This document shows positions 8,637 to 29,726 of a DNA stretch of 64,000 nucleotides, in pieces. The stretch spans positions 1 to 64,000 of the forward strand of contig JAWQFM010000026.1 of the NCBI GenBank assembly GCA_033442325.1, read 5' to 3'. The position numbers and the translations under genes were made by a program. The first letter of the stretch is position 1. Each line of letters begins with the position of its first letter. Below the pieces are notes generated by a model. That model worked only from the letters and a program-made list of their open reading frames with translations. It was not told the DNA's origin and ran no database searches. The stretch is from Salpingoeca rosetta (taxonomy: Eukaryota > Protista > Choanoflagellata).

Positions 8637-8706
<70 letters not shown>

Positions 8707-10337
8707 TACACTGTGTCAAAGAGTTCGTTCTCTTCGGCAGACATGATGCTGTAGAGACGAAGGCGTGAAGAGAACCGCACAGAAGGATTGCAAGACGATA
8801 GCGAGTGATGAGTGGTTCAGTGTGTGCAGGTACACATCAGCAGCAGCAGCAGCAGCAGCAGCAGCGGCGGCGGCGGCGGCGGCGGCAATGCACCCGCAAC
8901 AACAACACAATTCGGTGCTCGCACCTCATGTCACCATCATCCTTGTGCCGGAGCAGCGTCTCCCCTTCCTCTCTTCAGCTTCCAGGCATAACCTGTGGCC
9001 CAAACACGCACGAGGAACAGAGATTAGGACTAACAATCGCAGCACAAGATCAAACAATGGCACACGAATAGCAGACAGCAGACGCATGGAAGAATGACCA
9101 CGTTGACGTCACATATGCACACACGCCTACACATACAGTGTGCGCATACTTTTGAAAGCATTCGCTCTGTCCCGCCATGAGCAGCACCTTGCCAATGTTA
9201 TCAACGCTCTGCTCCGTCGACGCAATCAAGGGCATCCAGTGGATGGCAACCTGGTCGTTAACAGTGGCGAAATGGGTGTTGCGGTGAGCGAGGGAATGTG
9301 CGCAGGAGTGATGAGCCGTCATCACACGGTTGCCGAGCGTAATGAGAAACACACACACACACACACACGTCGCTCACTCTCATGATGAGACGTGGGCATT
9401 CCATCATCATCCCGAGCATTCGCGCGTCACACATGTCCAGCGAGATGATGCCACGCAAGCGGGCTGCTGTGGGGTGTGTGCGTGAAAACCACGTGTGCAT
9501 GGGGCAGGTGATGAGCACCTACAGCGTGTATGCCATGTGAACTGACTTGATTGCAAGCTGGGGGATGAATGATGTGTGACCACGACAGAGGACTGACCGA
9601 TGTCAGCGCAAATGCTGTGATTGCTCGCTCCGGTACCGCTCTGGAGGTGCGTCCCACTCAAACGTGGCCTTCTGTATTGCTGGTGCCTTGGTCTCCGCCA
9701 CTCTCACTTGCCGATTCCTGTCTGTTTGTTGTTTGCGTGGGAGGAAGAGACGATGCATCCGTGAGAACACACGTGCCAACAGCACCAGCACCAGCACCAG
9801 CAAGGCAGCAGCAGTGACAGCAGTGGTTGTGGTTTGGATATCGGATCACCACCGTGCACTGATACACACACACGCGCACAACACACACACGAGCGGAGGT
9901 GTGATTGCACCCACCTTGCAGGTGGCCGTGAATGACACTGCTTGTCGCTTGCCTTGTGGTGTGCGTATGTCAGCGGCACGTCTCAAGAGCGTCGTTAGGT
10001 TTCTGCAGGCCACTGCCATATCCAATCACAAGAGAACAGCACACATGTTCACGTTAGCCAAGCACAACAACGACGACCTGACGACGACGAAACCACCACT
10101 TTCAGCAGACCCACAGCCCCCTGCACACATCCTTGTGCCACAAGAAGAAGGAAAGAAGGGAGTCCACACCCACACCCACAACGAAGCGGCAACAGCAACA
10201 ACCGACAGCACTGCCACCACAAACAGGACACCGCGTCCCACGTTCACGTACTTGGTTGCCTGACGCATGGAGCGAACGAATAGTGCCCAAGAAGAAGAAG
10301 AACAATAAGCAGAAGTCGAGGGAGGAACAGTGGGCAT
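5200..10337 (-). pseudogene. Exostosin-family (GT47) glycosyltransferase pseudogene, multi-exon
   Basis: Ordered exon remnants match the EXT/GT47 domain: QVYVY..IYRAIRTAI..YSTDDLSKAYLFVP (~8110-8270); RLAYWKEGCNHILFEYS (~7650-7725); RKYLVIF (~7390-7415); LNHLPKLHNG (~7130-7195); CTQAEEEFNKYTCTDLALKTKFGLIVDGFG (~6785-6905); MAAGAIP/VIVVDHYVL (~6553-6601, frameshift); LPRILRSIPDEVVEM/VFEKFFKSLSTQVHT (~5758-5870, frameshift); ALESARINLF (~5558-5608). A signal-peptide-like RLLLIVLLLLG lies near 10290-10337. Linking the 8400-10337 exons to the same gene is inference. Confidence 0.8.
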
Positions 10338-10404
10338 GATGTGTGTTGGCTCACCTGAGGATCGTTGACGTGACGCCTGCTTTGTGTGCATGTGTGTGTG
10401 TGTG

Positions 10405-10453
<49 letters not shown>

Positions 10454-10946
10454 ATGTGATGTGATGTGTCTGTGCTTGTGTGTCAGAGACCTTTCTTCCA
10501 CATTGGTCTGGTTGGCTGTTGGTGACTGGGTAGCGATCACCAACAATCTCGTCTTCCCCTCTCCCACATCTCTCTTCTCCCCCATGCTGCTGTTGCAGTG
10601 ACTGCCACATCACCCCCTCCTTCCTTCCTTGCCTTGAAGAGAACAAGAAGAAGAAGAAGAAGAAGAAGAAGAAGAAGAAGAAGAAGAAGCGAGTGCAAGC
10701 AAGTTTGAGCTGCTGCATCTCCACAGTCGTGTCTCATCGACTGATTTCAGCTTTTCCCGTCTTCTTCTGCACAAACACGCACAACAGACGTTTGTCGTGG
10801 CTGGTTGCACACAATGCACACACACACACACACGCTGCATTCGCTGCGACGAAATGCATTCGCTGCGACGGAAAGGAAAGGATGGATGGGGAGGTGCGTG
10901 GTGGTGGTGGTTGGTGGTGGTTTGGTCACACTCAGCCACAACAGCC

Positions 10947-10982
<36 letters not shown>

Positions 10983-11370
10983 GGGAGCAGCTGGGGGATA
11001 TTGATGATGATGACAGATGACAATGACACATGCAATCCATCAAGCAGACGAGCAAGCAGGCAAGCGAGCACGCAAGCCAAGGGACGTGTATTCATTCACT
11101 CCGCTTGGACGAGCGACACGTCCACCACGTGGTGCGTGCGTGTGTGTTGTACTCACTGCTCTGCCCTCCTTCACACTGTTCCTCCCTGCCTCGCAGTCCA
11201 CTCTCCCTTTCTTTCCTTTGCACACCCCTTGCTTGACCTGCTCTCTGCACCCCCTCTCTTCTCCCCCCCCTTCACTCACACGGCTCAAGTCACATGCCTC
11301 TCACCTCCCCCTTTGCTTTTGGCTGCAACGCTGCGCGTCTTCATCTTCAACACCACCACCTGTTTTGCAG

Positions 11371-11939
11371 GCTGACGATGAGGATGATGATGGTGGCTTG
11401 AATAACAGTATCGTGTCCTTGAGCGGGTGCCATCACCGTGTGCAACGGCAACAAGAGGCACTTCCTTCTCTCTCGCTCTGTCTTGGTATGTGTGTGGCTG
11501 ATGGCGTGGGGGTGGTGTTGCCTGGGATTTCCACTCCACTGCACTGTACCTCAATGCGCTGTGTGACGCGACATGCACACCACAGTTTGCACTCCTCCTC
11601 CCCCACTTATCCCCTCTGCAAGTCCTTGTTCTTGTCAACCACCTCCCCTCGTCAATCACACCCCCCACACACACTCTCTCCTTTACCCCTGTCACGATGT
11701 GTGCTTGCTTCAGAGCAGGCCGCTGACATTGTCATCACCGCTGTCAGACGGCGGTCGGTGCAATACACGGGCATGGAGACAGTGAGCCAGCCCGTGGTCT
11801 CCAGCGTGGTGGCTGGAATGTGCACTGAGGCGAAGGATCCCACCACCACACTTTCGCTTCCATACCACCATGACTGACACCACTGGCACTGCTGCTGGTT
11901 GACACGCACCAGCAGGCATCGCTCCCAGCGCCACGCAAG

Positions 11940-11976
<37 letters not shown>

Positions 11977-11987
11977 TGTGTGTCTGT

Positions 11988-12045
<58 letters not shown>

Positions 12046-12950
12046 TTGAATTCATTTGCACTCGTTGCCCCTCCCGCATGTCGAAGCAACCACGCACACC
12101 GACCACCCCTCGTCAATACAACACCATTCAGCGCCCCAAATGTGCTGATGCAGGGCTGCACTGGCACGTCGTGCACGACAGCTTCTCATCGTCAGTTCTC
12201 CCTTCTCTCCTTTTTTTGTCTTCACACAGGTCGCATCACCCCCGCCCAGTGGAGCGCCTGCATCTTACGCCCCACCCTCCCGTTGCACGCGTGCACACAC
12301 CGATTCCGGCCCAGCGCAGGCTGTGCTGCAGCAGCCAACCACCCACACACATCGTCGCCGTATCCCCGCATCAACCAACCGCAGCCACCGACAGCCACGG
12401 GCATTGCACCTTTGCTGTGATTGAGTGCTGCCAGCACGTGGCCCCACCTCAACCTGCCACATCATCATCACCATCCCCGACACTGCCATGTGTGTGTGTG
12501 TGTGTGTGCATGCATGCGTGTTCACGCCATCGTTAACCACACCACGCCAACACAGCAACAGCCGCACTGCTTGCTGTCCTGCGCGGCGTTCTGGCGGTGC
12601 ACTCAAGGCCCTTTTGCCAGCCAGCTGCCCGCTGCTGCTAGCTGTGCTTCTCCCTGCCCATCTCAATCACATCAGCTTCAACCACAACTGCTGCTGTGTT
12701 CCGCCACCTCATCTTCTGCCAGCGAGGCATCACACCGCGGCCACAGCCGTCACTGCACGCTGCCGGTTTCAAGCAGCTCGCTGCGCTGGATGCTGTTGGC
12801 TCGTGGACCACCACACCGTTGTTGGAAGAGGGATTGGTCGTGATTGTGGCGGTTGATGTGGTGGTACTGCACGCCATGACAACAACAGCGGCAGTTGATG
12901 AGGTGATGGTGTGTTTGCGCTCCTCACTGGTTGCAGCGGCAGCAAGGAGG
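11371..12950 (+). pseudogene. Degraded plus-strand exon remnants (one piece weakly MMS19-like)
   Basis: Splice-bounded blocks (11371-11484, ~11714-11940, ~12230-12480) with stops. PVVSSVVAGMCTEAKDP loosely resembles the MMS19 'F..AM.GEKDP' motif. Weak. Confidence 0.25.
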
Positions 12951-12959
12951 TGGCCACCG

Positions 12960-13244
12960 TGTTTCTGGTTCGCATGCATGTGCTGGCCAACGTGGCGCAG
13001 GAGCGGTTCTTGGACTACGACAATGACTCTGTGCCGTTTATGAAGAACATTCTCCACCACGCAAACGACAGGCAATACCGCATGCTGCGCGGCCTGATGG
13101 GCGTGTCTGTTTGCAAGGACATGTTTGCGCCGGATGCACACGACTTCATGCGCATTATGCAAGCCAGTGCCGCCCAGATTGAGGAGGATGATCCACAACC
13201 CACATACATCCACACAAGGTGCGCTCAAGGCCACAGAGAGAGAG

Positions 13245-13326
<82 letters not shown>

Positions 13327-13523
13327 CGTGAACATGTGTGAACATGTCGCTTCGTCGTTTCCCTCCTTTCTCCACTTTCGCCTTGCCAAGCCTCACCGCC
13401 ACCCCTTGTCGTCCTGCCGCGTTCAGGCTGTTGAGTCGCTGCTCGCTGTGAACACCAGCGCGACCGAGAACTGCATCTCCGTCTTTGTCAAGATTGCACG
13501 CAACCCAGCACACGGCCTCTCAA

Positions 13524-13609
<86 letters not shown>

Positions 13610-14432
13610 ATTGGTACACTCCTTCTTCGCCGTCCTTTTGCGTTGGTTGTTTGCTCTTGTTGTCACCTTTTCGTCGCTTTTTCTTTACCCCCTCATCCAC
13701 CCATCCACCACCAACCCTTGTACAAACGAGATGCTGACGCATCTGCTTGACTGGCTGCCCATTACAGAAGACGACGATGAAACAAAGTACATCTTCACAT
13801 ACCTCGTCGAGCTCCTCCAAGCGTGACTGCTACGACTGTGTTTTGTGTGTGTGTGTCTATGTGTGTGTGCGTGTGTGTGTGTGTATGGCCTGGTCGTGCT
13901 GCATGTGTCGGTGGTGTGCTCTGCCGCCTGTCGTTCTTGTTCCCGACTGACTCCCCCGTTCTCTCTCCCATTGCTTCCCTCCTGTACCTCCCTCTCCTTC
14001 CTTTTGTTGTTGCTTCTGTAGGCGAGATCCACGCGTGACCGCGCCTGAGAGCCCGGTGAAGATTGTGCGGGCGTTTGTTTGTGCAGGTGTTGGCACCCCC
14101 GCGGCCGCCGTCGAAAGGCCCACTGCCAGGGCATGTACACAGCCTCATGGTGCGTGGGTTGTGTTGTGTGTGATTGATGTGATGTGGGTGTGTGGGTGTT
14201 TGCTGCCTCGAATATAAGCGACTGTCGTGTACTTCGTGTACTTTCCCATCCCCCTCTTCCTCCCTCCTCCTTCCTCCTCCTTCCTCTCCTCATTCTCACG
14301 CCCTCGTGTCGTTTCCTCTCGTAGAACATGCAGGATTCGCCTGCCCACGGTGTGTTGGGGCAGTTGACGCAGGACCCCGGAGGTGCACGCCGCGTGCAGC
14401 GCGCTGTTGAGGCACTTAGCTCGTCCGCATAG
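12960..14432 (+). pseudogene. IPO5: Importin-5 (karyopherin beta-3) partial copy: 5'-truncated and internally deleted
   Basis: LANVAQERFLDY..PFMKNILHHANDRQYRMLRGLMGVSVCKDMF..EEDDPQ, NTSATENCISVFVKI and LLDWLPITEDDDETKYIFTYLVELL match IPO5 motifs ([36 protein letters not shown].ED..E). The conserved KTIECIS segment, the N-terminal half and a long central part are missing. The last exon ends in TAG at 14432. Confidence 0.8.
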
Positions 14433-15371
14433 TCGCCATGTTGTGATGTGTCGTGTCAACTTGTGCACCAGTTGAACGAATGGCTGAATGTCTGTCGGTT
14501 CCTCTGTCGCATTCCTCTTGTTTCCGTTTCTTGCTCTCTTCCCTCTTCTTCTCTTCTCTTCTTCTGTTCTGTTCTTCCCTTCCTTCACTCTCCCTCTCGC
14601 CTGCCTGCTTGCTTGCTTGCTTATGTCACGCCCTTCTTGTGCTTGCCTGTTCTTTTCATTGTATGGCGCTGTGTACGGCTGAACACGTTCTTGGTGTGTT
14701 TGGTGGATGTGTGCTGCTGCTGCTGCTGTGTGTGGTTTGATTTTGGCTTGTAACTGGAGGGTGTTGTTTGATGTGCAGAGGGGTTGGCTGTTGTTTGGTT
14801 GGCTTGGCTTCCTGTTGCGTATGGGCACTGCTGTGTGTGTGGATGTGTGTTGAGGTGTTGAGAGCGTTGTTTGTGGGTTGTGTGGCGGACCTGTTCTTTC
14901 CTCAGTAAATGGCTCGATGAAAATGATGAGACCCGCTTGACGGTGGTGATGGTGGAGCGGCGGTGATGTTTGTGGTGTTGATGTGGCTACAGACATTGGT
15001 GTGTTGTACCAACCAGGCAAGACCAAAGAAGCGAGGAGGGCGCGGCTGTTGTTCCTTTCGGTGACAAAGCGAGTTGGGTTGTTGCTGGCTGGCTGGAGGC
15101 ACTTCATCCTGTTTGTTTGTTGTGTTCCTGTCGACAACGAGGGCTCGAAGAGATTGTTGACGAACATCTTCCACCGAAGCGCAGCTGTGCGGATAACCTC
15201 TGCAAGGTTTTGCGAATCGTCCAGATGGCTGAGTCGCAAAACAACAACACACACAAAACAAAGAAAGAAGAAGCAGTGCGTTCTCGTCGTCCATTTTGTC
15301 GTCGTCTTCTTCCAGCCGCTCACAAACACGTCACAACAAGCCACAAGGAGAAAAGACGCCGCGCCGCCGCC

Positions 15372-18300
15372 ATGTCCGGCGGAGAGAAGAGAGCGAGGGA
15401 GGAGGTGGAGGCGTTGCTGGCGCAGACGAAGCTGAAGGATGGGGTGAAGGACCAGATTAGGGCCATCGCCAACAACACGTGTGGGGAGGGAATATAGTGA
15501 GTGCAAAAGCAACCAAAACGACGTGTTGGAACATGCATGCATGTGTTGGACACAAGGACACTTCCTGTGGTTGTGCTTATTCTTCTCCCCCTCTCCCCCT
15601 CCCTCTCTGCTTGGCTTGTCCTTGTGTTGCAATGAGCGTGGTGTGGCTTGCTGTTGGGTGTTTACGTGTGCGTGTCCTGTCCCCTCGCACCGCCTGGACA
15701 CACTGTGTGTGTTTGTGGCAGGTTGGGACTGGCACCCTCATGTTTTTGCTCTGTGTATCCTCAGTCTTCTTGCTCATTTCATGACACACACCATTCATTT
15801 GTAATTACAGCTTGGTTGGTGCTGGCCTCGGCGTCATTGGGGCGCGTGCGGTGGCAGAGGCGCTCAAGCACAACACCTGCCTCAAACAACTCCGGTGCGT
15901 GGTGATGATGAATCTGCATCGTGTGATATGCATGGTTGATTGGGATGGCGGTGTTGCATGTTGCACCCCTTTCTCCTCCCCTGCTTGCGCATGTTTGGAC
16001 GTGTGTTCACCTTCGCTCCCTGCGTTTCCTTGTGTGCCTGCACAGCCTGGCAGTCAATTCCATCGGCGATGAGGGCGCTGTGGCGTTGGCGGAGATGCTG
16101 AAGCACAACACGGCCCTCAAACAACTCTAGTGAGTGTGTACACGCACACATGCACACATGTATGCTGCGTCACTGCCATTGCACCTTATCACGTGCACAT
16201 GTGTGGTTGATGGGGTGGGGTTCAACGACTGTGTTGACACCCACAACAATCATCATGACGCACGCACTCACTCTTCCTCATCCATGTGGCATCATGGACC
16301 TGCGTGGCATTCACCATACCGTCTTGACAGCCTGTACAACAACCGCATCGGCGATGAGGGCGCCGTGACGTTGGCGGAGATGCTGAAGCACAACACGACC
16401 ATGACATTGCTCGAGTGAGTGGAAGATACTCTTTGCAATGTGTGTCTTTAGGCGCTTCTTCTGCAATACCCATGTGCAGATGGAGGCATCGCAAGCCACC
16501 CACGATGTCTCTGCGACATGTTTGTCCAACCAACAAATGCTTCCATCCTTCACCTGTGCCACAAGTGCTGCCACATCCTGTGCAACTGGCATTTGCCCCC
16601 TTTGCCTCCGCCATTGTGCCTTAAAAGTCGTAGGACCTGATGTGCGAGCGAGTACGCGCGCACGTGGTCCATCTGCAACCCACTTTCATCCATGACACTG
16701 ACACGTGTTGCTTGCCCACCCGTTCCCCTGCCCTTCCAACATGCATTTCTTGCCACTTGCAGCTTGACCAACAACTCCATCACCCCGGTTGGCGGTGCGG
16801 CGCTGGGTGCCGCACTGGACCAGAACCGCACGCTAGAAACGCTCTGGTTTGTCGATTGCGTTGCGCCTGCCTCATGAACGCCTGTGTCCTGTTGTGGATT
16901 TGTGTGACCAATCGCCACTCTTTTGAGTGCACGTCACACTGTGTGTTTTCCTCTTTACTTGCTTGTATTTCTCCACAACCCTAACCACCAACCCTCCTGA
17001 CGCACGCACCGCACTTGCTGCCTGTTCCCAACCACACGCTACCACCACGTGTCCTCGTTTAGGATCAACAAGAACTCCACCGCCACCGCCCGCGCCTTTG
17101 GTGCCGCGCTGCCCGTCGACCGAGAACTCAGCACAGACTGGTCAGTCAACGCGTGCTTCCACTCTAGTCGTTCGCTCCTTGCCTTCTCTCTACCCTTCAC
17201 CTCACGCACACACGCTGCGTGATGCTTGCATCCAATGTCGCGTGGGATCACAGGTTTGATGACGATGAGGGCAAAGCCGCCTTTAACGAAGCACGCGCGG
17301 AGAAGAAGCGGCAGCATGAGCAGCTGTTTGCCGCCTGCAAGGATGGCGACGCTCCCGCTGTCACGTCCCTCATGGAGCAGGACAATGCAGACATCAACCA
17401 ACATAATGCACAGGTGTGTGCAATATGTGTGTGTGTGTGTGTTGTGGTTTGTTTGTGACGCCGCTCGCTCATGGTTGCACCGGCCGTGTGTTCGTTTCCA
17501 ACAGATCCTCACCACACGTGCCATGCCCCTTGCTACCCCCACCCAACAACAGGGCGACACGCCACTGCACGTTGCCTGCAGGCACAACCAGCCCGCCGTC
17601 GTGGAGCTGCTCCTGAAGAGAGATGCAGACACTGCCGTCAAGAACAAGAAGGTATGCTTCGCGTCGTGTGGCTGTTTCTGAAGACGTGACACAATTGTTT
17701 CTTTGCTTTGCGCTGTGTCCTCCCCCCTCTCCCTGCTTCCCTCCTTCCTCAACTCATGCGTTTTACCTTTCCAACACACGCAGGGAGAGACGCCCTATGA
17801 TGTGGCACAAGCCAACGGCCACGCTGCCATCACCAGCATGGACGGGCTGAAGCCAGGCGGCAAGCCTTCGGAGCAACCACAGCAGCAACAGCAGCCAAAA
17901 CAAGAGCCACCTGCGCCCACTCCTGCCGCCGGACCGAAGCAAGAACAACAAGCAGCGCAAGACGTGAGTGATCAGAAGAGTGCTTGCTTGCAACGCACAA
18001 GCAAATGCATCACGTCACCCATGCCATTCCTTCATCACGCTCTCCGTGGTCTCGTATCAAGCATAATCATGATGTCTCACACAACCATCACCACCGCCAC
18101 CAGCAGCAGCAGCCCGAGAAGGCGCGCAGGGAGCGTCTCCAGCAGCGCATGCGGGAGGTCATAGCACGCTTCAACGCGACCATGGCGGGCAGGGCCAAGC
18201 TCATCTTCATTGGCCAGGGGCGCGCCGGCAAGACCAGCACGTTCCACTCGCTCATAGGTCACATGTTCAACAAGCATGAGCACTCCACGCATGGCGCCGC

Positions 18301-18445
18301 CTCAACCGACCTCGCCGTCATTGTCGAATCAATGGACGTTCACGACTGGCAGGTGTGTACCCTTGTCTGGTGCGAGCATGTGATGTGTGCGACGATGGGT
18401 GTGAAGAGAGGTGGTGGTTGACACGATCATCCCCTCGCACAAGCG

Positions 18446-18510
<65 letters not shown>

Positions 18511-21489
18511 CCTTTGCAGGAGCTGGATGCGGAGATCTCGGAGTTGATGCGCAGTCTCTGCGGCACGGCGCTGGCGCAGGAATCTGGCGTGGATTGGGAG
18601 ATGAAGCAGGCGATGATGAAGGCGAAGGCCGACTTGGAGAGCCGTATCGCCCAACACCATCAGCAACAGCGGCAGCAGGAAGCCGAGAAGGCAAAGAAGG
18701 CAGCAGCTGCCAAACTGAAGCAGAAGCAGTTACAGAATGCAAAGGAGACGCGGCCACGTCCATCCTCCCGCACGTCGCCAGCGACTGTCCCCAAACCCAC
18801 CAAGGCATCTCATGACTCAGCATCTGCATCCAAGAAGCATGCCACCCTGAACCCTTCGAGCCAAAGTGATGCTGCTGCCCGTGATAACACCACCACTGCC
18901 ACAACCGGCATGTCTGCGGAGGAAATGGAGAAAGCGATCAAGGAGTTCAACGTGGGCGCCGTCATGGGCGAGGGCAAAGCGCGCGTCACGTTCAAGATCT
19001 TTGACCTGGGTGGCCAGTCCACCTTCTACATCTTTCACCCTTTCTTCCTCACAGAGTGAGTGCGGCAGTGCGTGTGTACGTGTGTGTGTGTGTGTGTTGC
19101 CTGCTTGCAGTCCCTCCACCACCTCTCATTCATTCACCTCTCCCTTCATCACCCCACCCACCCAACAGGTACGCGGTGTACCTGCTGGTGTTCTCGATGG
19201 AGGACCTGTTGCACCAAGACGAGAGCAAGCGGGCTGAGACGTGGGAGTTTATGGAGCACTGGCTGTCTTCCCTCCACCTCCACGCAAAAGGCGCACCCGT
19301 CCTCATCGTGGGCACATTCGCTGACAAGATCAACGAGAGGAAGCAGCACGAGAACATATCACGCGACATCCACAACCGCCTTCGCCACAACCCAGCCTTT
19401 CCTGGCGTCATTCACAACGACAAGCATGGTCTGTGGTTCTGGCCCGTCGACAACACCAAGTCCATCCGTGACCCCATGATCCAGGACCTGCGCCAGACCA
19501 TCTCCTCCACAGCGCTGGCGCAGGAGTACGTGAGCCAGGAGGTGGCTGTGCCCTACCTCCACCTCTACGACAAGCTCAACGCCATCGCCCGCGACGAGAA
19601 GCGACCGCTGCTTACGATTGATGAGGTGGTGAAGATTGCGCGCACGTGTGGGCTGCGCACACGCCAGGAGACAAGAGCGTGCCTGCAGTTCCTGCACCTG
19701 TACTCCATGGTGCTGTACTACGACAACGTGCCAGGCATGGAGGACTATGTGATCCTGAGTCCGCAGTGGGCAGTGGACATGATGACGCGCGTCATCCGCA
19801 ACTTTGACCTGCACCACGATGTGCGTGATGGCGAGGCGAGGGCCATTGGCGCGCAGCTGTGGGACGACCTTGTTGACCGCGGGATCCTGCATCGCCGTCT
19901 ACTGGATGTGCTGTGGAGGGACTTGGAAGGTGGTACGATTGAGCCCTTCCTCCAACTCATGATGGAGTACGGGTTGTGTATCCAGTACACGGCGCCAATG
20001 GTGCGGCTGTTCGGCCCTCAACAGCAACACCAACAACACCAACAGTACCTCGTCCCAGCAATCCTGCCGATGACGCTGGAGGATGAACAGGCGTCGTCGT
20101 CGGTGACGCTGAGCACGGCAGCAGCACAGCAGGCCAATCGATACGCTGGATATGAAGAGAAGACAGCCTACGTCGCCTTCAGCCTGAGGGACTTCAAGAG
20201 CGGTGTAAGCGCAAAGATTGCAGACACGCAGCAAGCCTCTTTCCTGCCAGAGGGCCTGTTCCCGATGGTTCTGGCACGCGTGATGGCACACATGCAGCAC
20301 GGTGCAACGGAACCGCCCATGTTGAGCCGCACAGACGCCGTAATCTTCATGGACGTGGCTGAGATCGAGATGCAGCTCGTGCCGGCTGTTGGCGGCATCA
20401 AGATCAAGGTCATGGCTGCACGTCCTCGCACGCTGCTGCACATGCTGTACAACACCATCACAACAGCTGTCACGCAGCGCTACCCCGAGCTCAAGGCCAC
20501 GTTGCTGCTGCCATTCAATGACACGAGACTGCTGTTCTTCGAGGACGTGCACACCCACCACACGAACAAGAAAGCGCTTCGCGTTGGCCGCTCGCAGCTG
20601 CTGTCACCAGGGGATCTGGTCGCCAAGTATGGTCCACTCTTGCCAGTTATGGGTCAGCAGGACAAATACGACGTCTTCATCAGCTACAGGTGAGACTCGT
20701 GTGTGTGTGTGTGTATGTGTGAATGTGTGTATGGTGCGAACAGGGTGTCTTTGCTTCCCTCTCTCTTCCTTTCTTATTTCGACATTCAACCACCACGTCA
20801 CAGGCAACGCGGCAACCGAGGCCTGGTGATGACATTGTACCCTAAGTTGGACCAGCACGGACTGGTGACCTTTGTGGACGCCAACAACTTGGAGACAGGC
20901 GTCAACTTCAAGCACGCGTGCATGACAGCCCTGCACAACAGTACTGTCGCCTGCCCCGTCGTTTCCGTGGGTGCCATCCATCAAATGCGCTCGCTCAGCC
21001 ACACTGACACGTGTGATAACGTGCTGTTGGAGTGGATGGCGATGCTGGAGCTGCAGCAGCTTGCTCGCCAGCATCCAGACAACATCCGCCTTCGCCGCGT
21101 TGTTCCGCTCTTCGTTGGCAGCGGCTGGCACGACAGCAGCCACCATGTTATGAGCGCGGCGGAGGTGAGCGAGTACGACTCGTTTGACCGCCTGAAGCGG
21201 CTGGCAACAAAGTTGCCAGATGTTGTGAGTGAGAAGACGGCGTCAGCACTCGACCAGTTCTTTTCTCAGGTGCTGCACCTGCCACCACCCCAGCAGCACA
21301 AGAGCGTGCGCGAAGTGGTTTTGTCGCTGTTTGACATTGACGCTGTCGTTGTATTCGATGCCACTGTGGACCGCACGTCACAGCTGCGCGACATTGCAGA
21401 GAAGGTGCGCCAGGTCGTCGTCTCTGCCAGGAGCAAGCAGCAAGCAGGGAGTGGAGCAACAACTGCATGTCGTTCCACGCAGGTATGGC

Positions 21490-21566
<77 letters not shown>

Positions 21567-21996
21567 GTGCTTGTCTATGTGTGGCTGTGTGTTCGTGAGT
21601 GGTTGTTTTCGTACATGCAGCAGTCGCACTCCTTTCTCCCTTCCACTTGGCGCGTGCTGTGCCTCACTCAACCCCTCTAACTCGTCTGCACGGCAGACAT
21701 CTTCCTCGACCTCCACCGCTACAACTCCCGTTACACCATCACCTGCCACCCCATCGTCCTCGTCCCCAAGCTCATTTGAGCCCGAGCTGATTCAATGGCT
21801 CAACCGCCACTCGCTGCTGCCGCACGTTAAGTCCGCGCTGATAGAGCACGGCATAGATACGGTGGAGGTGTTGGTGGCGTTGGTGCATGAGCGCGAGCTG
21901 ACCATGCAGATGCTGAAAGACTCAAAAGTGGCTGTTGGGCACGCCATGAAGCTTCTGCGAGAGGCCAAGAAGTGCAACGTGGACAGCACAGCCTAG
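15372..21996 (+). CDS. LRR-ankyrin-Roc-COR-TIR-SAM multidomain ROCO protein (~1420 aa, 14 exons)
   Basis: Exons 15372-15496, 15811-15894, 16046-16129, 16331-16414, 16763-16846, 17063-17140, 17254-17413, 17553-17651, 17784-17963, 18104-18352, 18520-19055, 19169-20689, 20804-21482, 21697-21996. All GT-AG and phase-compatible, 4263 nt in total. Motifs: RI-type LRR (NSIGDEGAVALAEMLKHNTALKQL); ankyrin (GDTPLHVAC, GETPYDVA); P-loop GQGRAGKTS; switch STHG; DLGGQSTFYIFHPFFL; PVLIVGTFAD; COR (LQFLHLYSMVLYY..VILSPQW, YLVPAILP, FLPEGLFPMVL); TIR (YDVFISYR..FVD..DNVLLEW); SAM (LIQWL..ALIEHGID..GHAMKLL). Confidence 0.92.
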
Positions 21997-22887
21997 CGTC
22001 TCACACACTGGTACCCCTGCTTCATTGCCTGCTTGCCGTTGTTCCCTTTTGGTTTGCCTCTGTACTTCCGTTTTTCATGCTGCACGGCTTGCCTCCTTCC
22101 GCGCATCATTCTGGAGCATTTGTGCGCTTCTGTTTGTTGCCGCTACTCAGTCACTTCACCCATTGCCCAGGTGGCAGTTGGATGCCTTGTGTGAAAAGCC
22201 CGTTTCTGTCTCAATACAGATCGTTCTTTCGCGCCATGCTCGTTCCGTGTACTTCTTTCTTGCTTGCCAAATACACACATGCACGTCACCCCTTGTTGGG
22301 GACGTGCGTGTGATATGGACAACATGTGCTGTCGTTCCCTGCACTGTCCTAATGCTAGTCCCGAGTACTTTGCTCTTGTTCCTGCTGTTCGCTTATGATG
22401 GCAACCACGTGATGTTGACGACAGTCCGCTATCGCTACCTCCTCTTCTTGTCTTCTTTTTCTCCTTCTTCTTGACTCCCTTCTACCAATGAACCCAAGGA
22501 ATAACAAAGCACGCAACCATAACACCCCTGGTCATCGCGTCAGTGCTGCTGCTGCTCTCGTGGTTGCCACGATCACGTGGCTCACGTCAGCCACTCACCA
22601 CACGCAAACGTCTTCATCGCGAATGATCCCACTCAGGAGCTCAGACAAGACGACTGCCTCACGAAGTCCCGACATCACGGGAGGTGATGCCTTGTTGTTG
22701 TGGGTGGGAATATCGGTACACTCTCGTGATGTGTTGTGCAGTGTTTCTCGACTTGATTGCTGTTGGTTGCCATGTATGGATGGAGAAGTCTCACCGCAAA
22801 GAAGCAAGAGAAATGCACGAACAGCAACGGCATGTAGAACGCATGCGTTTGCAACAGACACAAAGGCATGAAAAGAACCCCCCCCCC

Positions 22888-22930
<43 letters not shown>

Positions 22931-22937
22931 CCACATG

Positions 22938-23964
22938 TCAGATGCGGTAAAAGTAAAAGTCATAGTAGGCGCCGCCACCTGCAAGCCAACCGCAAACGTA
23001 GAACACAACGCCAAGCATGATATGTGTGTGTGTGTGTGCAGTGTGAGTGCACAGTGGCTGGCTGGCAACGATGAAGGAAGCATGGGAAGTGCACACAACG
23101 CATGGCACGAGCGATCAAGCACACAAAAGAAGCAGACGCACCATACTCGTGCGAGTAGTACTGGATGCGATACGTCCCGCCAGGCAGATTGTAATCCGCT
23201 GTGTGTCCATTGCACGACGTGCAACCGCCACACCCGTGCTGCAGACAAGCGTGAAAATGCGTGTGCGTTGTGCGTTGTGCATTGGTGCATTGGTGTCAAG
23301 GAAGTGAAACAACACCAACGCACACACATGCACGCACACACACATACACACGTGCACGCACACATACACACACATGCATACACACACGCATACACACACA
23401 CACCACACATACACACAAAACTACATAGACACGCACGTCGATTGGGCTGAACGTTGTTGGCCCGCTGATAATGTGGATCTGGCAGCAGTCGTCAGAGCGG
23501 CCTGAAATGTCGAAGAGAGATCAACACAGGATGCATTGTCAATAGTCGTGCGGTTGAAAGCTAATGTCCCACAAACACTCGTGAGTCACGACAAGCGTCG
23601 ATCACACCAAGCAGCACGCACAGTAGAAGCGGTAGCGGCCAGCGGCGATCTTGACGGTCGATACGGCAGTCACGCTGTAGTCGCTACCGTGATCACCCCC
23701 ATGGAGGAACGTGTTTCGATAGTTGGGGTAGGTGCGGCAGCCTGACTCAGGGAAACGGCGAAGGAAAGCGAAAAAGGAAGGTGGGGGGGACAAGCATGAG
23801 AAACAAACAGAATCCGAACGGGCGAACAACACACACATAGCACACACGCACACACATAGAGCACACCCACACTACACACAACACACACACACTACACACA
23901 ACACACACGCACAACACCCACACCCACACACACACACACATAGAGCACACACAGCACACACACA

Positions 23965-24008
<44 letters not shown>

Positions 24009-24109
24009 CNNNNNNNNNNNNNNNNNNNNNNNNNNNNNNNNNNNNNNNNNNNNNNNNNNNNNNNNNNNNNNNNNNNNNNNNNNNNNNNNNNNNNNNNNNN
24101 NNNNNNNNN

Positions 24110-24147
<38 letters not shown>

Positions 24148-24864
24148 GCTCTCTGCTCCGCCCATTCGCCAGTAGCCGGCAGGACAGTCATCCGATGCAA
24201 TCTGCAGTCATGTCAAGCAAACCAGGGACAGAGAATAGGTGAAGGCTGGAATGTACAGCAAATGCGTCTGCTTGCAAGCAAGAGCAGGCAACGTGTTCAC
24301 GGCACAGTTGCAGCATACACGCACCACTGAAATGCCTCCAGGCAAGCACTCGAACGGGGCCGTGCGAATGCATTCTGTTGAGAGCGGGTAGGAGCCGCTG
24401 GAGCACGTGCACGACTTGCATGACGTCTCTGTCGATGAGAAATTCAAGCATGACCACAACAACACACATCACACATTATACATGAGGTGTGAGAAGCGTT
24501 GGAAAAGAAAGCGCAAGTACAAGGGTGAACAAACACGCAAGCACATGCATGTGGCTGTGGCGTCAGGGCGTGTTGAGTATCTTCCCCAAACGCCAACACA
24601 CAAACAATCGCACGCATACCTCGATGTGTCCCAGCGTCCTGGTATGTGCCTTCGGGGCATGTAAAGCAGTTGCTGATGCCTTGGGTCGCTTCGCACGGCT
24701 GCATGTACGTGCCAACGCCGCAATGGGAAGGTGCACACGGCCAGCACGCCGACTCCAGGCCAGATGACGGGCTGTACGTGAAAGGCGGGCATGATGAGCA
24801 GCCGTTGCTCTCCGTGTCTGTGCACCAGCTGCTGACGTACTTGCCTGCATTTGGGGTTGTGCGG

Positions 24865-24953
<89 letters not shown>

Positions 24954-26025
24954 GGGGGGGGGGGGCACTGTGAGTGAGAGCATGGTGATGACTCGGCGCA
25001 GCCGCAGCAGCAAACGAGCGTTGTGATGCAATGATAACACAGGCGCACACACAGACAGACACACACAGACAGACACACAGACAGACACAGACGCACAGAC
25101 ACACACAGACACACACACACACACACACACACGCAGACAAACACACACACACGCAGACACATACACATGTACCTGCGGGGCATCGCTGAAAGCAGCGGTC
25201 GAGGGCACCGTTTGATGCCATCAGGTTCTGAACGGCCGTTTCAAGTCCGCCAACCACGTCCGCCGTGTCTGCTACCTGGTCGTTCGTGGCACTCAGTTCA
25301 TCCGTGAGCGTCTGCACCTGCGTGCTAATCGCGTCTTGCAATTCGCCCCGAAGAGAATCAGCGGTGGCCGTGGCCTTTGCATCGACCTGCCATGGTGTTG
25401 AGTGTTGCGGTGGCGATTGCGCGTTGGTGAAATGGGCTGGCCGCACACCTCAGTACACCTACACGTGCAATTTGGGAGTTGAGGCAGAATGCAGAAGCCA
25501 AGGTCCAACAGGCCATGCAGTGCGTTGACTCACAAATGCCATGAGGCTTGGCACGGTGCTCATCTCCAGTGAGTCGAGCCGACCAGAAGCCGTGCTGACG
25601 TCGGAATCAAGACCGCCCAAACGCCCATTCACCGCAGTCTCCAAGCTTGTCGTCTGCCGTGTGCGTGAGTGCATGCGTGCATGTGTATGTGTATGTGTGC
25701 TTGAGCACATGTGAGTGTTTGAGCACATGTGAGTGCTTGAGCACATGTGAGTGTTTGAGCACATGTGAGTGTGTGCCCATGTGCGCACACAACTTGTGTG
25801 CATGGGGCAAGGTGCATGCCATACTGCAACGGCCAAACAATGCCACCACCGCTGCGCACCGCTGTCTCCAGTGACGCAGCTGCACCCTCGAGGTACGCCA
25901 CCAGCGGCTCGCCTGCGATAACATACACGAAAACATGACCAGCAGTGAGCAAAGGCGAGCACCACGAGGGAGTTAGAAACGCACGTTTACAAGCAGTGGC
26001 ACACGATCTGACGCTCACCCTTAAC

Positions 26026-26063
<38 letters not shown>

Positions 26064-26526
26064 AACCGACCGCTTGGGGAATTGCTGTCGATGACGGCCT
26101 GCACGGCGTCAGCGACTCCACCGCCACCGTCGACCGCGTCGGTGACAATCTGACGCACTTGCGCCTCCGTGCGAACACGTGCACTCGGGTCATCCATGAT
26201 GGCCGCAATCGCAGACGCAATCGAATCCTCAACCTGAACGTCAGTCAACAGGCGACCAGACCTGTGATAATTATGATGATGATGATGACAACGACGAAAC
26301 AGGGTGGTGAATATGGAGCGAGCCCCACGGACGACGTTGGTGGGAGGCGAATTTGATGCAGATGTAAGCACGCTGTGTGAGACGCAATGAGAACATAGGC
26401 AAACACTTTTGTTTGCGCCAATCGCTTTCCCCACCTCTGAGCGCTGGGAGCAGTGTAAGATTTCAGCGAGTTTTCCCCAATAAAACCGAAATCACACACA
26501 CACACACACACACATACACATAAGCA

Positions 26527-26565
<39 letters not shown>

Positions 26566-27631
26566 ACATGTACACACCATGGGTTGGGCTCGTTGAGGTT
26601 TGTCTTGTACGTCAGCTTGGCCTCGCGGTCATCAAACACCTCAAAGCGAAGCGTGCCGTCCTCTGCCTTCACCGTCGGGCGTTTCACTGGCGCATGACGT
26701 TCGAGGTGTTTGGAGTAGGGGAGATAAAGGTTGCGATAAGATGCAGACGAGTGAGATGGAGAGAAGTGAGCTGTTCAGCAGTGAAAAGCGCTGCACTTCA
26801 TCAAAAGCGTTGCAGCTTCATACTCGCGCGCGCACTCTTGCATCGTACCCTTTGCACCCCCCCCCCCCCCCAAAAAAAAAAAAAAAATACACACAGAAGA
26901 ACGTACGGATGCATTGGGGAAGGTCTCCAACCAGCTGGCCGTTGTCGCACTGCAGCGTAACCGGGTGCCCAGCATAGCCTTCGTTGCACCCAGCGACACA
27001 GTCGTCCTCGTGAACAGAGTCCTCACAGGCACTCAGGTCCATGCGTTCAGGGTCATAATCCTGGGGTGGCGTGCATGCAACAGCTGCAAGTGAAACGCGA
27101 CAAAAAAAAAAGCATCTCGTGAGCGATGAGACGAGGTCATGAGGCCATGAATGAGGGCAAGCAAATGCACAACATAGCACGCAACGTCAAACACAAATAC
27201 AAATACAACACACACACGCACGCACACGCACAACAACACAAGACACACACACGCACACACCACAAGACACGCACGCACATGACACAGCACACACAGCAAG
27301 AACACAACACAACACTGCTACACTATCCCTGATTCTTCTCACTCACGAGAGCACGCGGGCGGCTGTGGCTGGAGCGCGACGGTGTCGTTGACGACAACGC
27401 AGGCGCGGTTTACTTGAGGGCCCTCATACCCGCGCACGCACGACCACAAACATCCATCCCCGACAGCAACCTTTGACCTACACGTTGTGTGCAGCAGCGG
27501 CGTCAGGTCGGCCGTGGCATCGCACGGCGCTGCAGAGCAACCATGCAACAACAGTACATGACGTGAGCGTCAACAACAACACCAAGAACAACACCAAGGT
27601 TTGTAGTGCGACGAGACACACACACACACAC

Positions 27632-27676
<45 letters not shown>

Positions 27677-27679
27677 ACA

Positions 27680-27776
<97 letters not shown>

Positions 27777-28140
27777 CCGATTGATGTCAGCGATTCGCTG
27801 CGACCGCCAACCGCTTGCACAGCCCGTTTTGACACTCACGATTGCACTGGGGCAGGTTGCCGTTGAAGGAGCCATTGTCGCAGGTGAGCGTCGTTTGTGT
27901 TCCGGTGTATCGCGCTGTCAGGTTGCAGCCGGCCACGCACGACTCGCCGTCCAGCACGCCGTTGCAGCTGTGCACCACATACCATGGTGCAGAGTCCAGC
28001 GTGCACGCAGCCGCGGTGGTTGTTGAAGTTGTTGTTGCGACTGTCGTTGTCGTAGCGTTTTGGAGCGCACTCGCTGTGGTGACCGCTGTGCTCAAGCACG
28101 CAACCACCACAGCGGCAGCAAACACCCCACCACCACACAT
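22938..28140 (-). CDS. Secreted multidomain protein: Cys-rich (sushi-like) repeats, coiled coil, TNFR-like Cys repeats, C-terminal PA14-like domain
   Basis: ATG at 28140 with signal peptide (MCGGGVFAAAVVVACLSTAVTTASA) and Thr tract. Three C..C..C.C..GY.G...L.C exons (~27840-28010, 27347-27530, 26910-27082). Heptad-rich exons (25170-26260). CPAGKY..CSSCPPFTYS..CGVGTY..CFTCPEGTYQ (24620-24845). Terminal exons give AGRYRFYCRSDDCCQIHI..LPGGTYRIQYYSHEYGGGAYYDFYFYRI*, with the stop at 22938. One intron spans an N gap. Confidence 0.8.
25701..25770. repeat. 18-nt intronic minisatellite x4
   Basis: ttgagcacatgtgagtg(t/c) repeated four times. Confidence 0.85.
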
Positions 28141-28548
28141 CCTTCTTTGTGCAAAGCCGTTGAAGATATGAAGGTGTGGTGCGGCGGATATGGAGGTGGG
28201 GAGGGGGCAACAAGGCAGACAAGGCAACGCCAAGCAAGAAGGAGCTTCTTTGGTGGTGTGCTTGCAGGAAGTCAGCAGAGCGCCCAAAACACAAACAAAT
28301 CGTTTATTAGGAATATCTTCCACTGAAGCTCGTGGACAGGGCCTGCCGCGTCGCATTTGAAACACAAAATCAAAAGTGTGGAACGCTTGGAACCGCAGAC
28401 GTCACACACACACACACACTCACACACACACACACACACTCTCTCTCTCACACTCTCTCACACACACACACACAAGTGTAAACACTGCAAACAGCCATAC
28501 ACGCATGCACACACACACACCGACACACAAACACACACAGACACACAC

Positions 28549-29203
28549 TCAGTAGTAGGTCTCTCGCATGGCATAGCCGCGAGGAAACTTGCGAACAAAG
28601 TAGCGGCGTGTTTCATCGTACACGACGATGAGCACGGAGAAAGGCAGCGGCGTGAGCCAATAGCGGAACGGGAACGGGCGCAGGTTGAAGGCGACGTCCG
28701 TGCCGGGCGTGTAGGTCAGTACCGCTGCCAGCGCCGTCTCAAAGAAGAGCGCAAAATATCAACACCTTGTTCCCACTGGACAAAACAACAAAGTGGGGGG
28801 GGGGGAAGTTGAGTGAAAACCGCCGGATTGCTATCTTCTGCACATGAACACAAAGGAAGAAGAGGAGAGAAGGGGGAGAAAGGGGAGAAGAAGGGAGATA
28901 AGGGGAGAGAAGGGAGGGAGGGAGAAAAGAGAGAAGGCCGAGAGAGATATAGAGAGACAGAAAAGAAGGATAANNNNNNNNNNNNNNNNNNNNNNNNNNN
29001 NNNNNNNNNNNNNNNNNNNNNNNNNNNNNNNNNNNNNNNNNNNNNNNNNNNNNNNNNNNNNNNNNNNNNNNNNTGTATCTTATATTCCACTCCCTCCTAT
29101 ACCTTTTCCATCCTTGCGACAATACTCGGCTGATGTATCTTATATTTGTACATATCCATCTCTCCCTCCACATTCACGCACACACCGATGCACACTCTCA
29201 CAG

Positions 29204-29253
<50 letters not shown>

Positions 29254-29693
29254 ACACACACACAATCACACACACACAATCACACACACACACAAACACA
29301 CACACACACAATCACACACACACACAATCACACACACACAAACACACACACACACACACAAACATACACAAAGAGCGCAAACCTCATGCCATGCTGGAGA
29401 AGGGAGAGCTTGCGGGTCTTGCAGATGACAAGATCCGCCCACTGGGCAATGACAATGGAGACGAAATACGCCGTGTGGCCCATGTACTCCAAGCTCTTTC
29501 GTTGGTCATACGTCTGCAAAATGAACGAATGAGAGGAAGGAAGGACAGAGCAGAGTAGAGAAGAGATAAGAAGGCAAAGCGTGTGCATTTGGGGAAGCGT
29601 GATGGATATTGAAGAAGCCCTCATGCTCGTTTGTCGTGAAGCGATTGCACGCAAACGTATACACACACAATCACACATGCACACAGTGCACAA

Positions 29694-29726
<33 letters not shown>

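What the first reader, a model, noticed from the sequence alone, without database searches (positions are those of the whole stretch)
15372..21996. Candidate innate-immune receptor: LRR-ANK sensor, Roc-COR switch and TIR-SAM effector in one protein
Seen: an intact 14-exon gene whose motifs give LRR-ankyrin-Roc-COR-TIR-SAM. Known: NLRs use sensor + NTPase + TIR; SARM1 uses SAM-driven oligomerisation to activate a TIR NADase; LRR-Roc-COR-TIR proteins occur in bacteria; LRR-ROCO genes are proposed immune receptors in brown algae. Inference: this is an NLR-like receptor using a Roc-COR GTPase in place of a STAND ATPase. There is no kinase (unlike LRRK2), and the SAM follows the TIR (reverse of SARM1). 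I know of no characterised protein with this six-domain order in a unicellular relative of animals.
Basis: partly seen in the sequence, partly recalled or inferred. Interest (0 to 1): 0.88.

Follow-up and report, generated by a model that had tools for sequence, protein, structure and literature searches.

The report
Choanoflagellate LRR-Roco GTPase with TIR-SAM tail
This is a real, intact gene of the choanoflagellate Salpingoeca rosetta (already annotated as hypothetical protein PTSG_08524), one of about 40 copies of a fast-diversifying family that joins a leucine-rich-repeat sensor and a Roco GTPase switch to a TIR enzyme and a SAM domain, which makes it look like an immune receptor in a close relative of animals, though that function is untested.

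Summary
Observation confirmed. A 14-exon GT-AG model at 15372-21996 (+) gives a 1420-aa protein identical to the public S. rosetta protein PTSG_08524. Pfam and fold searches give LRR(RI-type)-ANK-Roc-COR-TIR-SAM, with no kinase or STAND ATPase. GTPase motifs and the TIR catalytic glutamate (E1171) are intact.

It is not unique. The genome has about 40 Roc-COR loci of this family, 35 with the TIR next door. They are enriched near scaffold ends, inside a block that is duplicated together with its upstream flank. This scan had already flagged the family on other DNA of this genome.

A 2026 preprint showed that the TIR of the paralogue F2UB80, 87% identical to this one, makes cADPR in E. coli and needs that glutamate.

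New here:
- The paralogues carry 3-6 one-repeat, 84-nt, phase-2 LRR exons.
- dN/dS is about 2.4 at the predicted exposed LRR positions, against 0.16 in Roc-COR-TIR.
- Relatives occur in other choanoflagellates and in Guillardia.

The NLR-like reading is plausible but untested. RNA reads do not show that this particular copy is expressed: its 3' third is almost uncovered, and many reads come from paralogues. Verdict: new member of a known, partly assayed kind.

The parts
15372..15496 (+). Exon 1: start codon and N-terminal 41 residues; no signal peptide or membrane segment
   Evidence: model equals PTSG_08524; hydropathy
15811..17140 (+). Exons 2-6: four 84-nt phase-2 cassette exons, each one 28-residue ribonuclease-inhibitor-type LRR, plus a 78-nt capping repeat (residues 42-179)
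   Evidence: LRR_6 48 bits; 3-6 such exons in paralogues; dN/dS 2.4 at exposed positions
17254..17963 (+). Exons 7-9: ankyrin repeats (about three; exon 8 is one 99-nt phase-0 repeat) followed by a Gln/Pro-rich linker
   Evidence: (Ank 2e-9); intron 8 and 9 junctions seen in RNA reads
18104..19055 (+). Exons 10-11: first half of the Roc GTPase. P-loop GQGRAGKTS at 18212-18238, a ~136-residue low-complexity insert (residues 410-545), and switch II FDLGGQ at 19000-19017
   Evidence: Roc 59.9 bits in two stretches; motifs conserved in 23 paralogues
19169..20689 (+). Exon 12: rest of Roc (G4 GTFADK), COR-A, COR-B and the first TIR strand (KYDVFISYR)
   Evidence: (COR-A 8e-20, COR-B 8.5e-5); intron 11 junction 19055/19169 seen in 53 RNA reads
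20804..21482 (+). Exon 13: TIR domain; catalytic glutamate E1171 is the codon at 21030-21032, in DNVLLEW
   Evidence: 87% identical to the assayed F2UB80 TIR; Glu invariant; Z 16 to RUN1 TIR
21697..21996 (+). Exon 14: Ser/Thr/Pro-rich disordered linker, SAM domain (residues ~1346-1415), stop codon
   Evidence: SAM_2 26.8 bits for the exon alone; SAM folds fill the top of the list
9000..15300 (.). Upstream flank that is duplicated together with the gene: 86-92% identical copies lie beside other family members near scaffold ends, including the other end of this same scaffold, inverted
   Evidence: the downstream flank 22000-28000 is single-copy apart from short dispersed repeats

Best explanation
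The gene encodes a soluble cytosolic Roco protein, PTSG_08524. It belongs to a lineage-expanded S. rosetta family whose members most likely act as ligand-gated switches for a TIR NAD+-cleaving enzyme, and probably serve in conflict with microbes, viruses or other parasites.

Proposed working:
1. A short LRR arc plus ankyrin repeats hold the protein in an off state and bind a ligand.
2. Binding changes the nucleotide and dimer state of the Roc-COR module.
3. COR- and SAM-mediated self-association then brings TIR domains together, so that they form active sites and turn NAD+ into cADPR.
4. cADPR, or NAD+ loss, acts as the output. One possible target is the ADP-ribose-gated TRPM2 channel of this species.

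Shown here: gene model, domain order, intact GTPase motifs and catalytic glutamate, TIR and SAM folds, family size, LRR-focused diversifying change.
Shown by others for a paralogue 87% identical in the TIR: glutamate-dependent cADPR production in E. coli.
Inferred: ligand sensing, GTP gating, oligomerisation, the downstream target and the immune role.
For: - Exact gene model and identity to PTSG_08524.
- Pfam architecture.
- G1, G3 and G4 motifs conserved across 23 paralogues; FDLGGQ is invariant.
- TIR fold Z 16.0 to RUN1, with the catalytic Glu invariant in 31 sequences.
- F2UB80 (= PTSG_12359 = P0153) TIR listed as active and cADPR-producing, catalytic residue 1118; it is 87% identical to this TIR.
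- SAM fold.
- 40 Roc-COR loci, 35 with a TIR within 4 kb.
- 15 of 40 loci lie within 81 kb of a scaffold end, against ~20% expected (p = 0.007).
- LRR cassette exons number 3-6 among seven exactly reconstructed paralogues.
- Pooled dN/dS: LRR 0.95, Roc 0.09-0.14, COR 0.14-0.15, TIR 0.20. Exposed LxxLxLxxN positions give 2.44 (bootstrap 1.5-5.0), LRR scaffold 0.44, core 0.16.
- Family members carry other C-terminal enzyme domains: PNP_UDP_1 in PTSG_02681, PARP in PTSG_12997.
- No signal peptide or membrane span.
- ADPR-gated TRPM2 exists in S. rosetta (PMC6461439, PMC11479946).
Against: - No experiment links any family member to infection, cell death or any phenotype.
- Expression of this copy is unproven. 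At 98% likeness, two stranded RNA-seq runs leave 19597-19796, 20997-21396 and 21597-21996 at about zero depth. At many places every read differs from the window, as expected of reads from paralogues. No junction reads were listed for introns 12 and 13.
- The SAM homodimer prediction gave no answer.
- COR-B is below Pfam's cut-off.
- The dN/dS estimate uses non-independent pairs, a counting method, and cassettes that may not be orthologous after shuffling.
- The assayed TIR was an isolated domain over-expressed in bacteria, and it did not deplete NAD+ there.
Confidence: 0.55

Rival explanations
1. A non-immune signalling GTPase. The family senses environmental or bacterial cues (prey, rosette- or mating-inducing factors) or internal states, and uses cADPR as an ordinary calcium-mobilising second messenger. 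The many copies would tune sensory range rather than defence.
For: - cADPR is a general second messenger, and the assayed paralogue TIR made cADPR without depleting NAD+.
- Roco proteins such as LRRK2 and the Dictyostelium Rocos act in trafficking and the cytoskeleton (titles).
- S. rosetta life history is steered by bacterial cues (own knowledge).
Against: - dN/dS above 1 confined to the exposed LRR positions, enrichment near scaffold ends and swapping of enzyme tails are the usual marks of conflict genes, not of conserved signalling.
- The proteins are cytosolic, so they cannot directly sense extracellular cues.
Confidence: 0.2
2. This particular copy is a silent or decaying duplicate, a by-product of block duplication near chromosome ends, even if other family members work.
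For: - Near-zero RNA depth over the TIR and SAM exons, and sites where all laid reads carry another letter.
- The gene sits 19 kb from a scaffold end inside a multi-copy block.
- Decayed relatives exist: a TIR exon with three TGA stops at C30:59296-59679, and PTSG_10524, which lacks the catalytic segment.
Against: - All 14 exons are open, splice sites are canonical, and every GTPase and TIR motif is intact.
- The core is under purifying selection among the close paralogues (omega 0.16).
- Spliced contigs that match this copy exactly across introns 8, 9 and 11 exist in one run.
- Immune-type genes are often silent until induced.
Confidence: 0.15
3. A self/non-self or intragenomic-conflict system, for example an incompatibility or kin-recognition function during mating or colony life, like the fungal HET-type NLRs, rather than pathogen defence.
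For: - The signatures are the same as for immunity: diversifying sensor, death-type enzyme tail, large polymorphic family.
- A PNP_UDP_1 tail in one member is also typical of fungal incompatibility NLRs (own knowledge).
Against: No data on polymorphism between strains, and no known cell-fusion incompatibility in S. rosetta. It cannot be told apart from pathogen sensing with the present data.
Confidence: 0.1

Closest known systems
S. rosetta PTSG_12359 (UniProt F2UB80), a paralogue assayed in bioRxiv 10.64898/2026.04.20.719644
   Same: Same LRR-ANK-Roc-COR-TIR-SAM order. 85% identical overall and 87% in the TIR, with the same DNVLLEW catalytic motif. Also lies about 21-26 kb from a scaffold end.
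   Different: A different locus, with three rather than four annotated 84-nt LRR exons (its annotated 5' end is shorter) and a SAM only 71% identical. Only its isolated TIR was tested; neither protein has been studied at full length.
Brown-algal LRR-ROCO candidate immune receptors (PMC11378527; Zambounis et al. 2012 as cited there)
   Same: LRR-Roc-COR order, one LRR per exon in phase 2, exon shuffling, diversifying selection on the LRR, and a large lineage-specific family.
   Different: The algal exons are 72 nt coding 24-residue repeats; here they are 84 nt coding 28-residue RI-type repeats. The algal proteins have no ankyrin, TIR or SAM, so no obvious output enzyme.
Plant TIR-NLR receptors (RUN1, RPP1, ROQ1, L6)
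   Same: Best structural matches of the TIR (Z 14-16 over 157-166 residues). Same logic of LRR sensor, nucleotide switch and TIR NADase, with diversifying LRRs.
   Different: The switch is a Roc-COR GTPase, not an NB-ARC STAND ATPase. The TIR is C-terminal, not N-terminal, and a SAM is added. Sequence identity to the plant TIRs is only 14-19%.
SARM1 / TIR-1
   Same: Couples SAM and a glutamate-dependent TIR NADase in one chain. TIR fold Z about 13.4, and the SAM fold matches SARM1 SAM at Z 6.6-6.7.
   Different: The order is ARM-SAM-SAM-TIR in SARM1; here one SAM follows the TIR. There is no ARM domain, and a GTPase is present. The SAM ring assembly of SARM1 is not shown here (one search gave no answer).
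Kinase-less and bacterial Roco proteins (MFHAS1/MASL1, Chlorobium tepidum Roco) and LRRK2
   Same: LRR(-ANK)-Roc-COR core with G1, G3 and G4 motifs. ANK-LRR ahead of Roc recalls LRRK2.
   Different: No kinase or WD40. The Roc domain carries a ~136-residue low-complexity insert between switch I and switch II. A TIR-SAM tail is present.
Other eukaryotic Roc-COR-TIR proteins: Salpingoeca infusionum, Hartaetosiga balthica, Didymoeca costata, Guillardia theta L1JCD1, Chondrus TPR-ROCO-TIR
   Same: Roc-COR followed by a TIR of the same subtype, with the D-N/x-L-L-x-E-W motif (PMC11378527).
   Different: 25-35% identical. N-terminal parts differ (long LRR, SH2, EF-hand, TPR), and SAM is present in only some.

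Membership tests
Roco (ROCO) proteins | Roc GTPase directly followed by a COR domain | tested here: met
   Pfam Roc 59.9 bits (cut-off 27), COR-A 69.0 (cut-off 35.3), COR-B 21.1 (below 27) in P0154
Roco (ROCO) proteins | Intact nucleotide-binding motifs G1 (GxxxxGKT/S), G3 (DxxGQ), G4 ([NT]xxD) | tested here: met
   GQGRAGKTS, FDLGGQ and GTFADK are present and conserved in 23 paralogues. GTP binding itself was not measured.
Catalytic TIR domains (NADase / cADPR synthase) | TIR fold | tested here: met
   TIR_2 31.3 bits and TIR 24.9 bits, both above their cut-offs. AF2 model Z 16.0 to RUN1 TIR; Foldseek E 5e-6.
Catalytic TIR domains (NADase / cADPR synthase) | Conserved catalytic glutamate | tested here: met
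   E1171 in DNVLLEW is invariant in 31 aligned sequences. It corresponds to E1118 of F2UB80, which the preprint's table lists as the catalytic residue.
Catalytic TIR domains (NADase / cADPR synthase) | Measured NAD+ cleavage or cADPR production | not testable with these tools
   Shown only for the paralogue F2UB80 TIR expressed in E. coli (Table S4 row 33).
SAM domain | Five-helix SAM fold and profile match | tested here: met
   SAM_2 26.8 bits for exon 14 alone and 20.9 in the full protein (cut-off 20.5). Model pLDDT 88.5; the top structural matches are SAM domains, best Z 8.0.
SAM domain | Self-association | tested here: inconclusive
   Complex prediction on two copies of residues 1340-1420 returned 'no answer'.
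NLR / STAND receptors | NACHT or NB-ARC STAND ATPase as the central switch | tested here: not met
   No NACHT or NB-ARC hit in the full-length Pfam scan; the only NTPase is Roc. The gene is therefore an analogue of NLRs, not a member.
SARM1 family | ARM - tandem SAM - TIR order | tested here: not met
   The order is TIR then a single SAM, with no ARM. The TIR aligns at higher Z and over more residues with plant NLR TIRs than with SARM1.
LRRK-type Roco kinases | Protein kinase domain after COR | tested here: not met
   No Pkinase hit. The UniProt name 'non-specific serine/threonine protein kinase' given to many family members is not backed by a domain.
Diversifying LRR immune-type receptor repertoires | Large lineage-specific family with excess non-synonymous change at exposed LRR positions | tested here: met
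   40 loci. Omega 2.44 (bootstrap 1.5-5.0) at the x positions of LxxLxLxxN, against 0.44 at LRR scaffold positions and 0.16 in the core. This is a counting method on 7 paralogues.
Diversifying LRR immune-type receptor repertoires | Demonstrated role in defence | not testable with these tools
   No paper in the library names this gene or its close paralogues.

The most novel reading that the evidence does not exclude
Choanoflagellates, which lack canonical NLRs, use a diversifying repertoire of LRR-Roco-TIR-SAM proteins, concentrated near chromosome ends, as their cytosolic immune receptors. That would be an independent third build of the 'LRR sensor + nucleotide switch + TIR enzyme' design, with a GTPase in place of a STAND ATPase, shuffled LRR exons generating specificities, and cADPR/ADPR (possibly through the ADPR-gated TRPM2 channel) as the alarm signal.
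Probability: 0.35. Interest if true: 0.85.

Novelty: new member of a known kind. Interest (0 to 1): 0.6.

Why it matters
Richter et al. 2018 (PMC6040629) found no LRR-containing NLR family in choanoflagellates, so it is open how the closest relatives of animals sense intracellular threats. This family has the evolutionary marks of such receptors, and its output enzyme has now been shown to be active in one paralogue. S. rosetta can be edited genetically, so the idea is directly testable. It would also give Roco proteins, whose physiological switch logic is still debated because of LRRK2, a simple enzymatic read-out (cADPR) for their GTPase state.

Tried and rejected
- phmmer of the TIR exon and of the SAM exon against PDB sequences found nothing relevant. 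Fold searches were needed instead.
- The complex prediction SAM homodimer job gave no answer; it is not evidence either way.
- Foldseek on the SAM model alone gave only non-significant E-values, although SAM domains led the list. The exhaustive aligner was clearer.
- Pfam on ten long ORFs upstream (520-15701) and eight downstream (22595-32016) gave nothing, except a weak HAD-hydrolase match at 30152-30823 that belongs to the P-type ATPase gene. The content of the co-duplicated upstream block therefore stays unknown.
- A telomere-repeat scan found TTAGGG arrays on other scaffolds. The first 100 listed did not include C26, and the window does not start with telomere repeats, so I write 'near scaffold ends', not 'subtelomeric'.
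I obtained them through the look-up of encoding contigs instead.
- A search for the gene ids in papers found nothing. The H3K27me3 paper (PMC12572184) and the Aravind-lab conflict-systems paper (PMC7159879) hold nothing on this family.
Full report
**The gene.** I rebuilt the gene from the raw window. Fourteen exons joined at canonical GT..AG introns give a 4263-nt frame from the ATG at 15372 to the TAG ending at 21996, coding for 1420 residues. The product is identical, residue for residue, to the public protein P0154 = PTSG_08524 of Salpingoeca rosetta, a 'hypothetical protein' that UniProt auto-names a kinase. The genome is 55.4 Mb in 68 contigs, and the window is the first 64 kb of a 1,067,092-base scaffold.

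**Domains.**
- Exon-by-exon and full-length Pfam scans give LRR_6, ankyrin, Roc, COR-A and a weak COR-B, TIR_2/TIR and SAM_2, in that order, with no kinase, NACHT or NB-ARC.
- The P-loop (GQGRAGKTS, 18212-18238), switch II (FDLGGQ, 19000-19017) and G4 (GTFADK) are intact and conserved across 23 paralogues.
- The Roc domain is interrupted by a ~136-residue Ala/Ser/Lys/Gln-rich insert.
- The TIR-SAM region (residues 1080-1420), modelled with a 31-sequence alignment, has mean pLDDT 83.5.
- The TIR part matches plant NLR TIR domains best: RUN1 at Z 16.0, rmsd 3.5 over 166 residues, Foldseek E 5e-6. SARM1/TIR-1 follows at Z about 13.4 and AbTir at 13.1.
- The SAM modelled alone has pLDDT 88.5. Its top ~30 matches among 48,161 chains are nearly all SAM domains: p73, SHIP2, Tric1, CASKIN2, tankyrase and SARM1, best Z 8.0.
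- The catalytic glutamate is E1171 (codon 21030-21032), invariant in all 31 aligned relatives.
- The protein has no signal peptide or membrane span.

[quoted passage not shown] Its Table S4, row 33, lists the TIR of F2UB80 (1352 aa, residues 1034-1255, catalytic residue 1118) as active and producing cADPR. The abbreviation list of its Figure 3 includes Roc and COR. F2UB80 is P0153 = PTSG_12359, 85% identical to this protein overall and 87% in the TIR. So the enzyme activity of the family's TIR is published for a sister copy. I found no paper that names this gene or describes the family as such. Richter et al. 2018 noted Ank-TIR combinations and found no LRR-containing NLR family in choanoflagellates. 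This scan's own notes had already flagged relatives on other pieces of this genome, including Rab- and TIR-SAM-first variants and a follow-up that counted at least 35 genes.

**The family.**
- Six-frame searches of the genome with the Roc-COR exon and with the TIR exon find 40 Roc-COR loci, 35 of them with the family's TIR within 4 kb. They also find a few decayed pieces, such as a TIR exon with three TGA stops at C30:59296-59679. These counts are lower bounds.
- Twenty-six annotated S. rosetta proteins share the TIR-SAM tail.
- Some members carry other enzyme tails: PNP_UDP_1 in PTSG_02681 and PARP in PTSG_12997. PTSG_10524 lacks the catalytic TIR segment.
- Fifteen of the 40 loci lie within 81 kb of a scaffold end, against about 20% expected (binomial p = 0.007). 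The closest subfamily lies almost entirely there.
- The 6.3 kb upstream of this gene is itself present at 86-92% identity beside other family copies, including an inverted copy at the other end of this scaffold. The downstream flank is unique. The gene therefore sits at the inner edge of a duplicated end-block.
- Close paralogues share hundreds of identical 40-mers, which fits gene conversion. Identity varies by domain in a mosaic way.

**Evolutionary test of the 'sensor' idea.** I reconstructed exact coding sequences for seven close paralogues; each translation reproduces its annotated protein.
- They carry 3, 4, 5 or 6 LRR exons of exactly 84 nt in phase 2, one repeat per exon. Brown-algal ROCO genes show the same arrangement with 72-nt phase-2 exons (PMC11378527).
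- Pooled Nei-Gojobori dN/dS by domain: LRR 0.95, ANK 0.31, Roc 0.09-0.14, COR 0.14-0.15, TIR 0.20, SAM 0.29. The SAM has a much higher dS (0.88) than the rest.
- Within the LRR, the six x positions of LxxLxLxxN per repeat give dN/dS 2.44 (bootstrap 1.5-5.0). The other LRR positions give 0.44 and the Roc-COR-TIR core gives 0.16. These x positions also have the highest residue entropy over 32 cassettes.
- Caveats: the pairs are not independent, this is a counting method, and cassettes may not be orthologous after shuffling. Restricting to the three four-cassette genes still gives 1.71 against 0.46.

**Spread.** Among the best 150 representatives found with the Roc-COR exon in 1.84 billion proteins, many carry the same TIR subtype after COR. 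Named sources are other choanoflagellates (Salpingoeca infusionum, Hartaetosiga balthica, Didymoeca costata, Mylnosiga fluctuans), the cryptophyte Guillardia theta, unnamed EukProt transcriptomes and short environmental contigs. A TPR-ROCO-TIR is reported in the red alga Chondrus. The layout is old and is not confined to S. rosetta.

**Expression.** I laid reads on 15997-21996, which is 6,000 letters, at 98% likeness.
- The two stranded RNA-seq runs put the RNA on the + strand.
- They show GT..AG junctions for intron 8 (17651/17784), intron 9 (17963/18104, with an alternative acceptor three bases on) and intron 11 (19055/19169, 53 reads).
- Loose ends at 18353 fit splicing of intron 10.
- Depth is close to zero over 19597-19796, 20997-21396 and 21597-21996.
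- No junctions were listed for introns 12 and 13.
- At many sites every read differs from the window, and many LRR 'joints' carry foreign letters. Much of the signal therefore comes from paralogues.

The tool warns that dips in depth are not findings, so I conclude only that transcription of this copy, and of its TIR-SAM end in particular, is not demonstrated.

**Reading.** The best-supported account is a cytosolic, ligand-gated Roco switch that controls a cADPR-forming TIR, in a family with the marks of conflict genes. The NLR comparison is one of function and logic, not of membership, because the STAND ATPase is absent. The SARM1 comparison holds for the SAM-plus-TIR pairing, but not for domain order or TIR subtype. 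Ligand sensing, GTP gating, SAM- or COR-driven assembly, the downstream target (the ADPR-gated TRPM2 of this species is a candidate) and the immune role are all inferences. The SAM self-association job gave no answer.

**Verdict.** The finding is correct as an observation, partly right as an interpretation, and a new member of an already catalogued and partly assayed kind. The LRR-focused diversifying signal and the duplication near scaffold ends are the new results here.

Noticed in passing
window 9000-15300 (probably from ~1 on): A multi-copy block, 86-92% identical, found next to other family members near scaffold ends (C35:28-34 kb, C26:1053-1060 kb inverted, C13, C34, C4, C15, C27, C29, C36, C32, C28, C18). 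Its long ORFs have no Pfam match, so its content is unknown.
   Followed up: partly
window ~24858-24953 and ~27616-27774 (also 21490-21601, inside intron 13): A dispersed repeat of about 95-160 nt, in both orientations, with well over 50 copies across the genome at 85-100% identity. It looks like a miniature transposable element. Part of the intron copy overlaps the (GT)n tract.
   Followed up: no
window 44001-48000: An AT-rich island (GC 0.35-0.38, against ~0.55 elsewhere in the window).
   Followed up: no
window 18104/18107: Intron 9 uses two acceptors three bases apart (CAG|CAG). Both are seen in RNA reads, and the downstream one would drop a single glutamine. The reads may partly come from paralogues.
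   Followed up: no
window 18460-18510, 19075-19100, 20700-20730, 21490-21560: Long (CA)n/(GT)n microsatellites sit in introns 10, 11, 12 and 13. The reads tool reported reads being cut at such repeats.
   Followed up: no
P0002 (PTSG_02681), P0172 (PTSG_12997), P0173 (PTSG_10524); G000:C30:58867-59679: Variant family members: a Roc-COR with a degenerate TIR plus a PNP_UDP_1 phosphorylase-type tail; a model with TIR-SAM followed by Roc-COR and a PARP catalytic domain, which may be two genes fused by annotation; a copy whose TIR lacks the catalytic segment; and a TIR exon with three in-frame TGA stops.
   Followed up: partly
SAM exon, window 21697-21996, and its paralogue counterparts: Synonymous divergence of the SAM exon among close paralogues (dS 0.88) is three to six times that of the rest of the gene (0.15-0.44). 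The SAM exon seems to escape the homogenisation seen elsewhere, or to have been swapped between subfamilies.
   Followed up: no
window ~30152-30823 (-): A weak HAD-hydrolase match that fits the P-type ATPase gene noted by other readers of this window.
   Followed up: no
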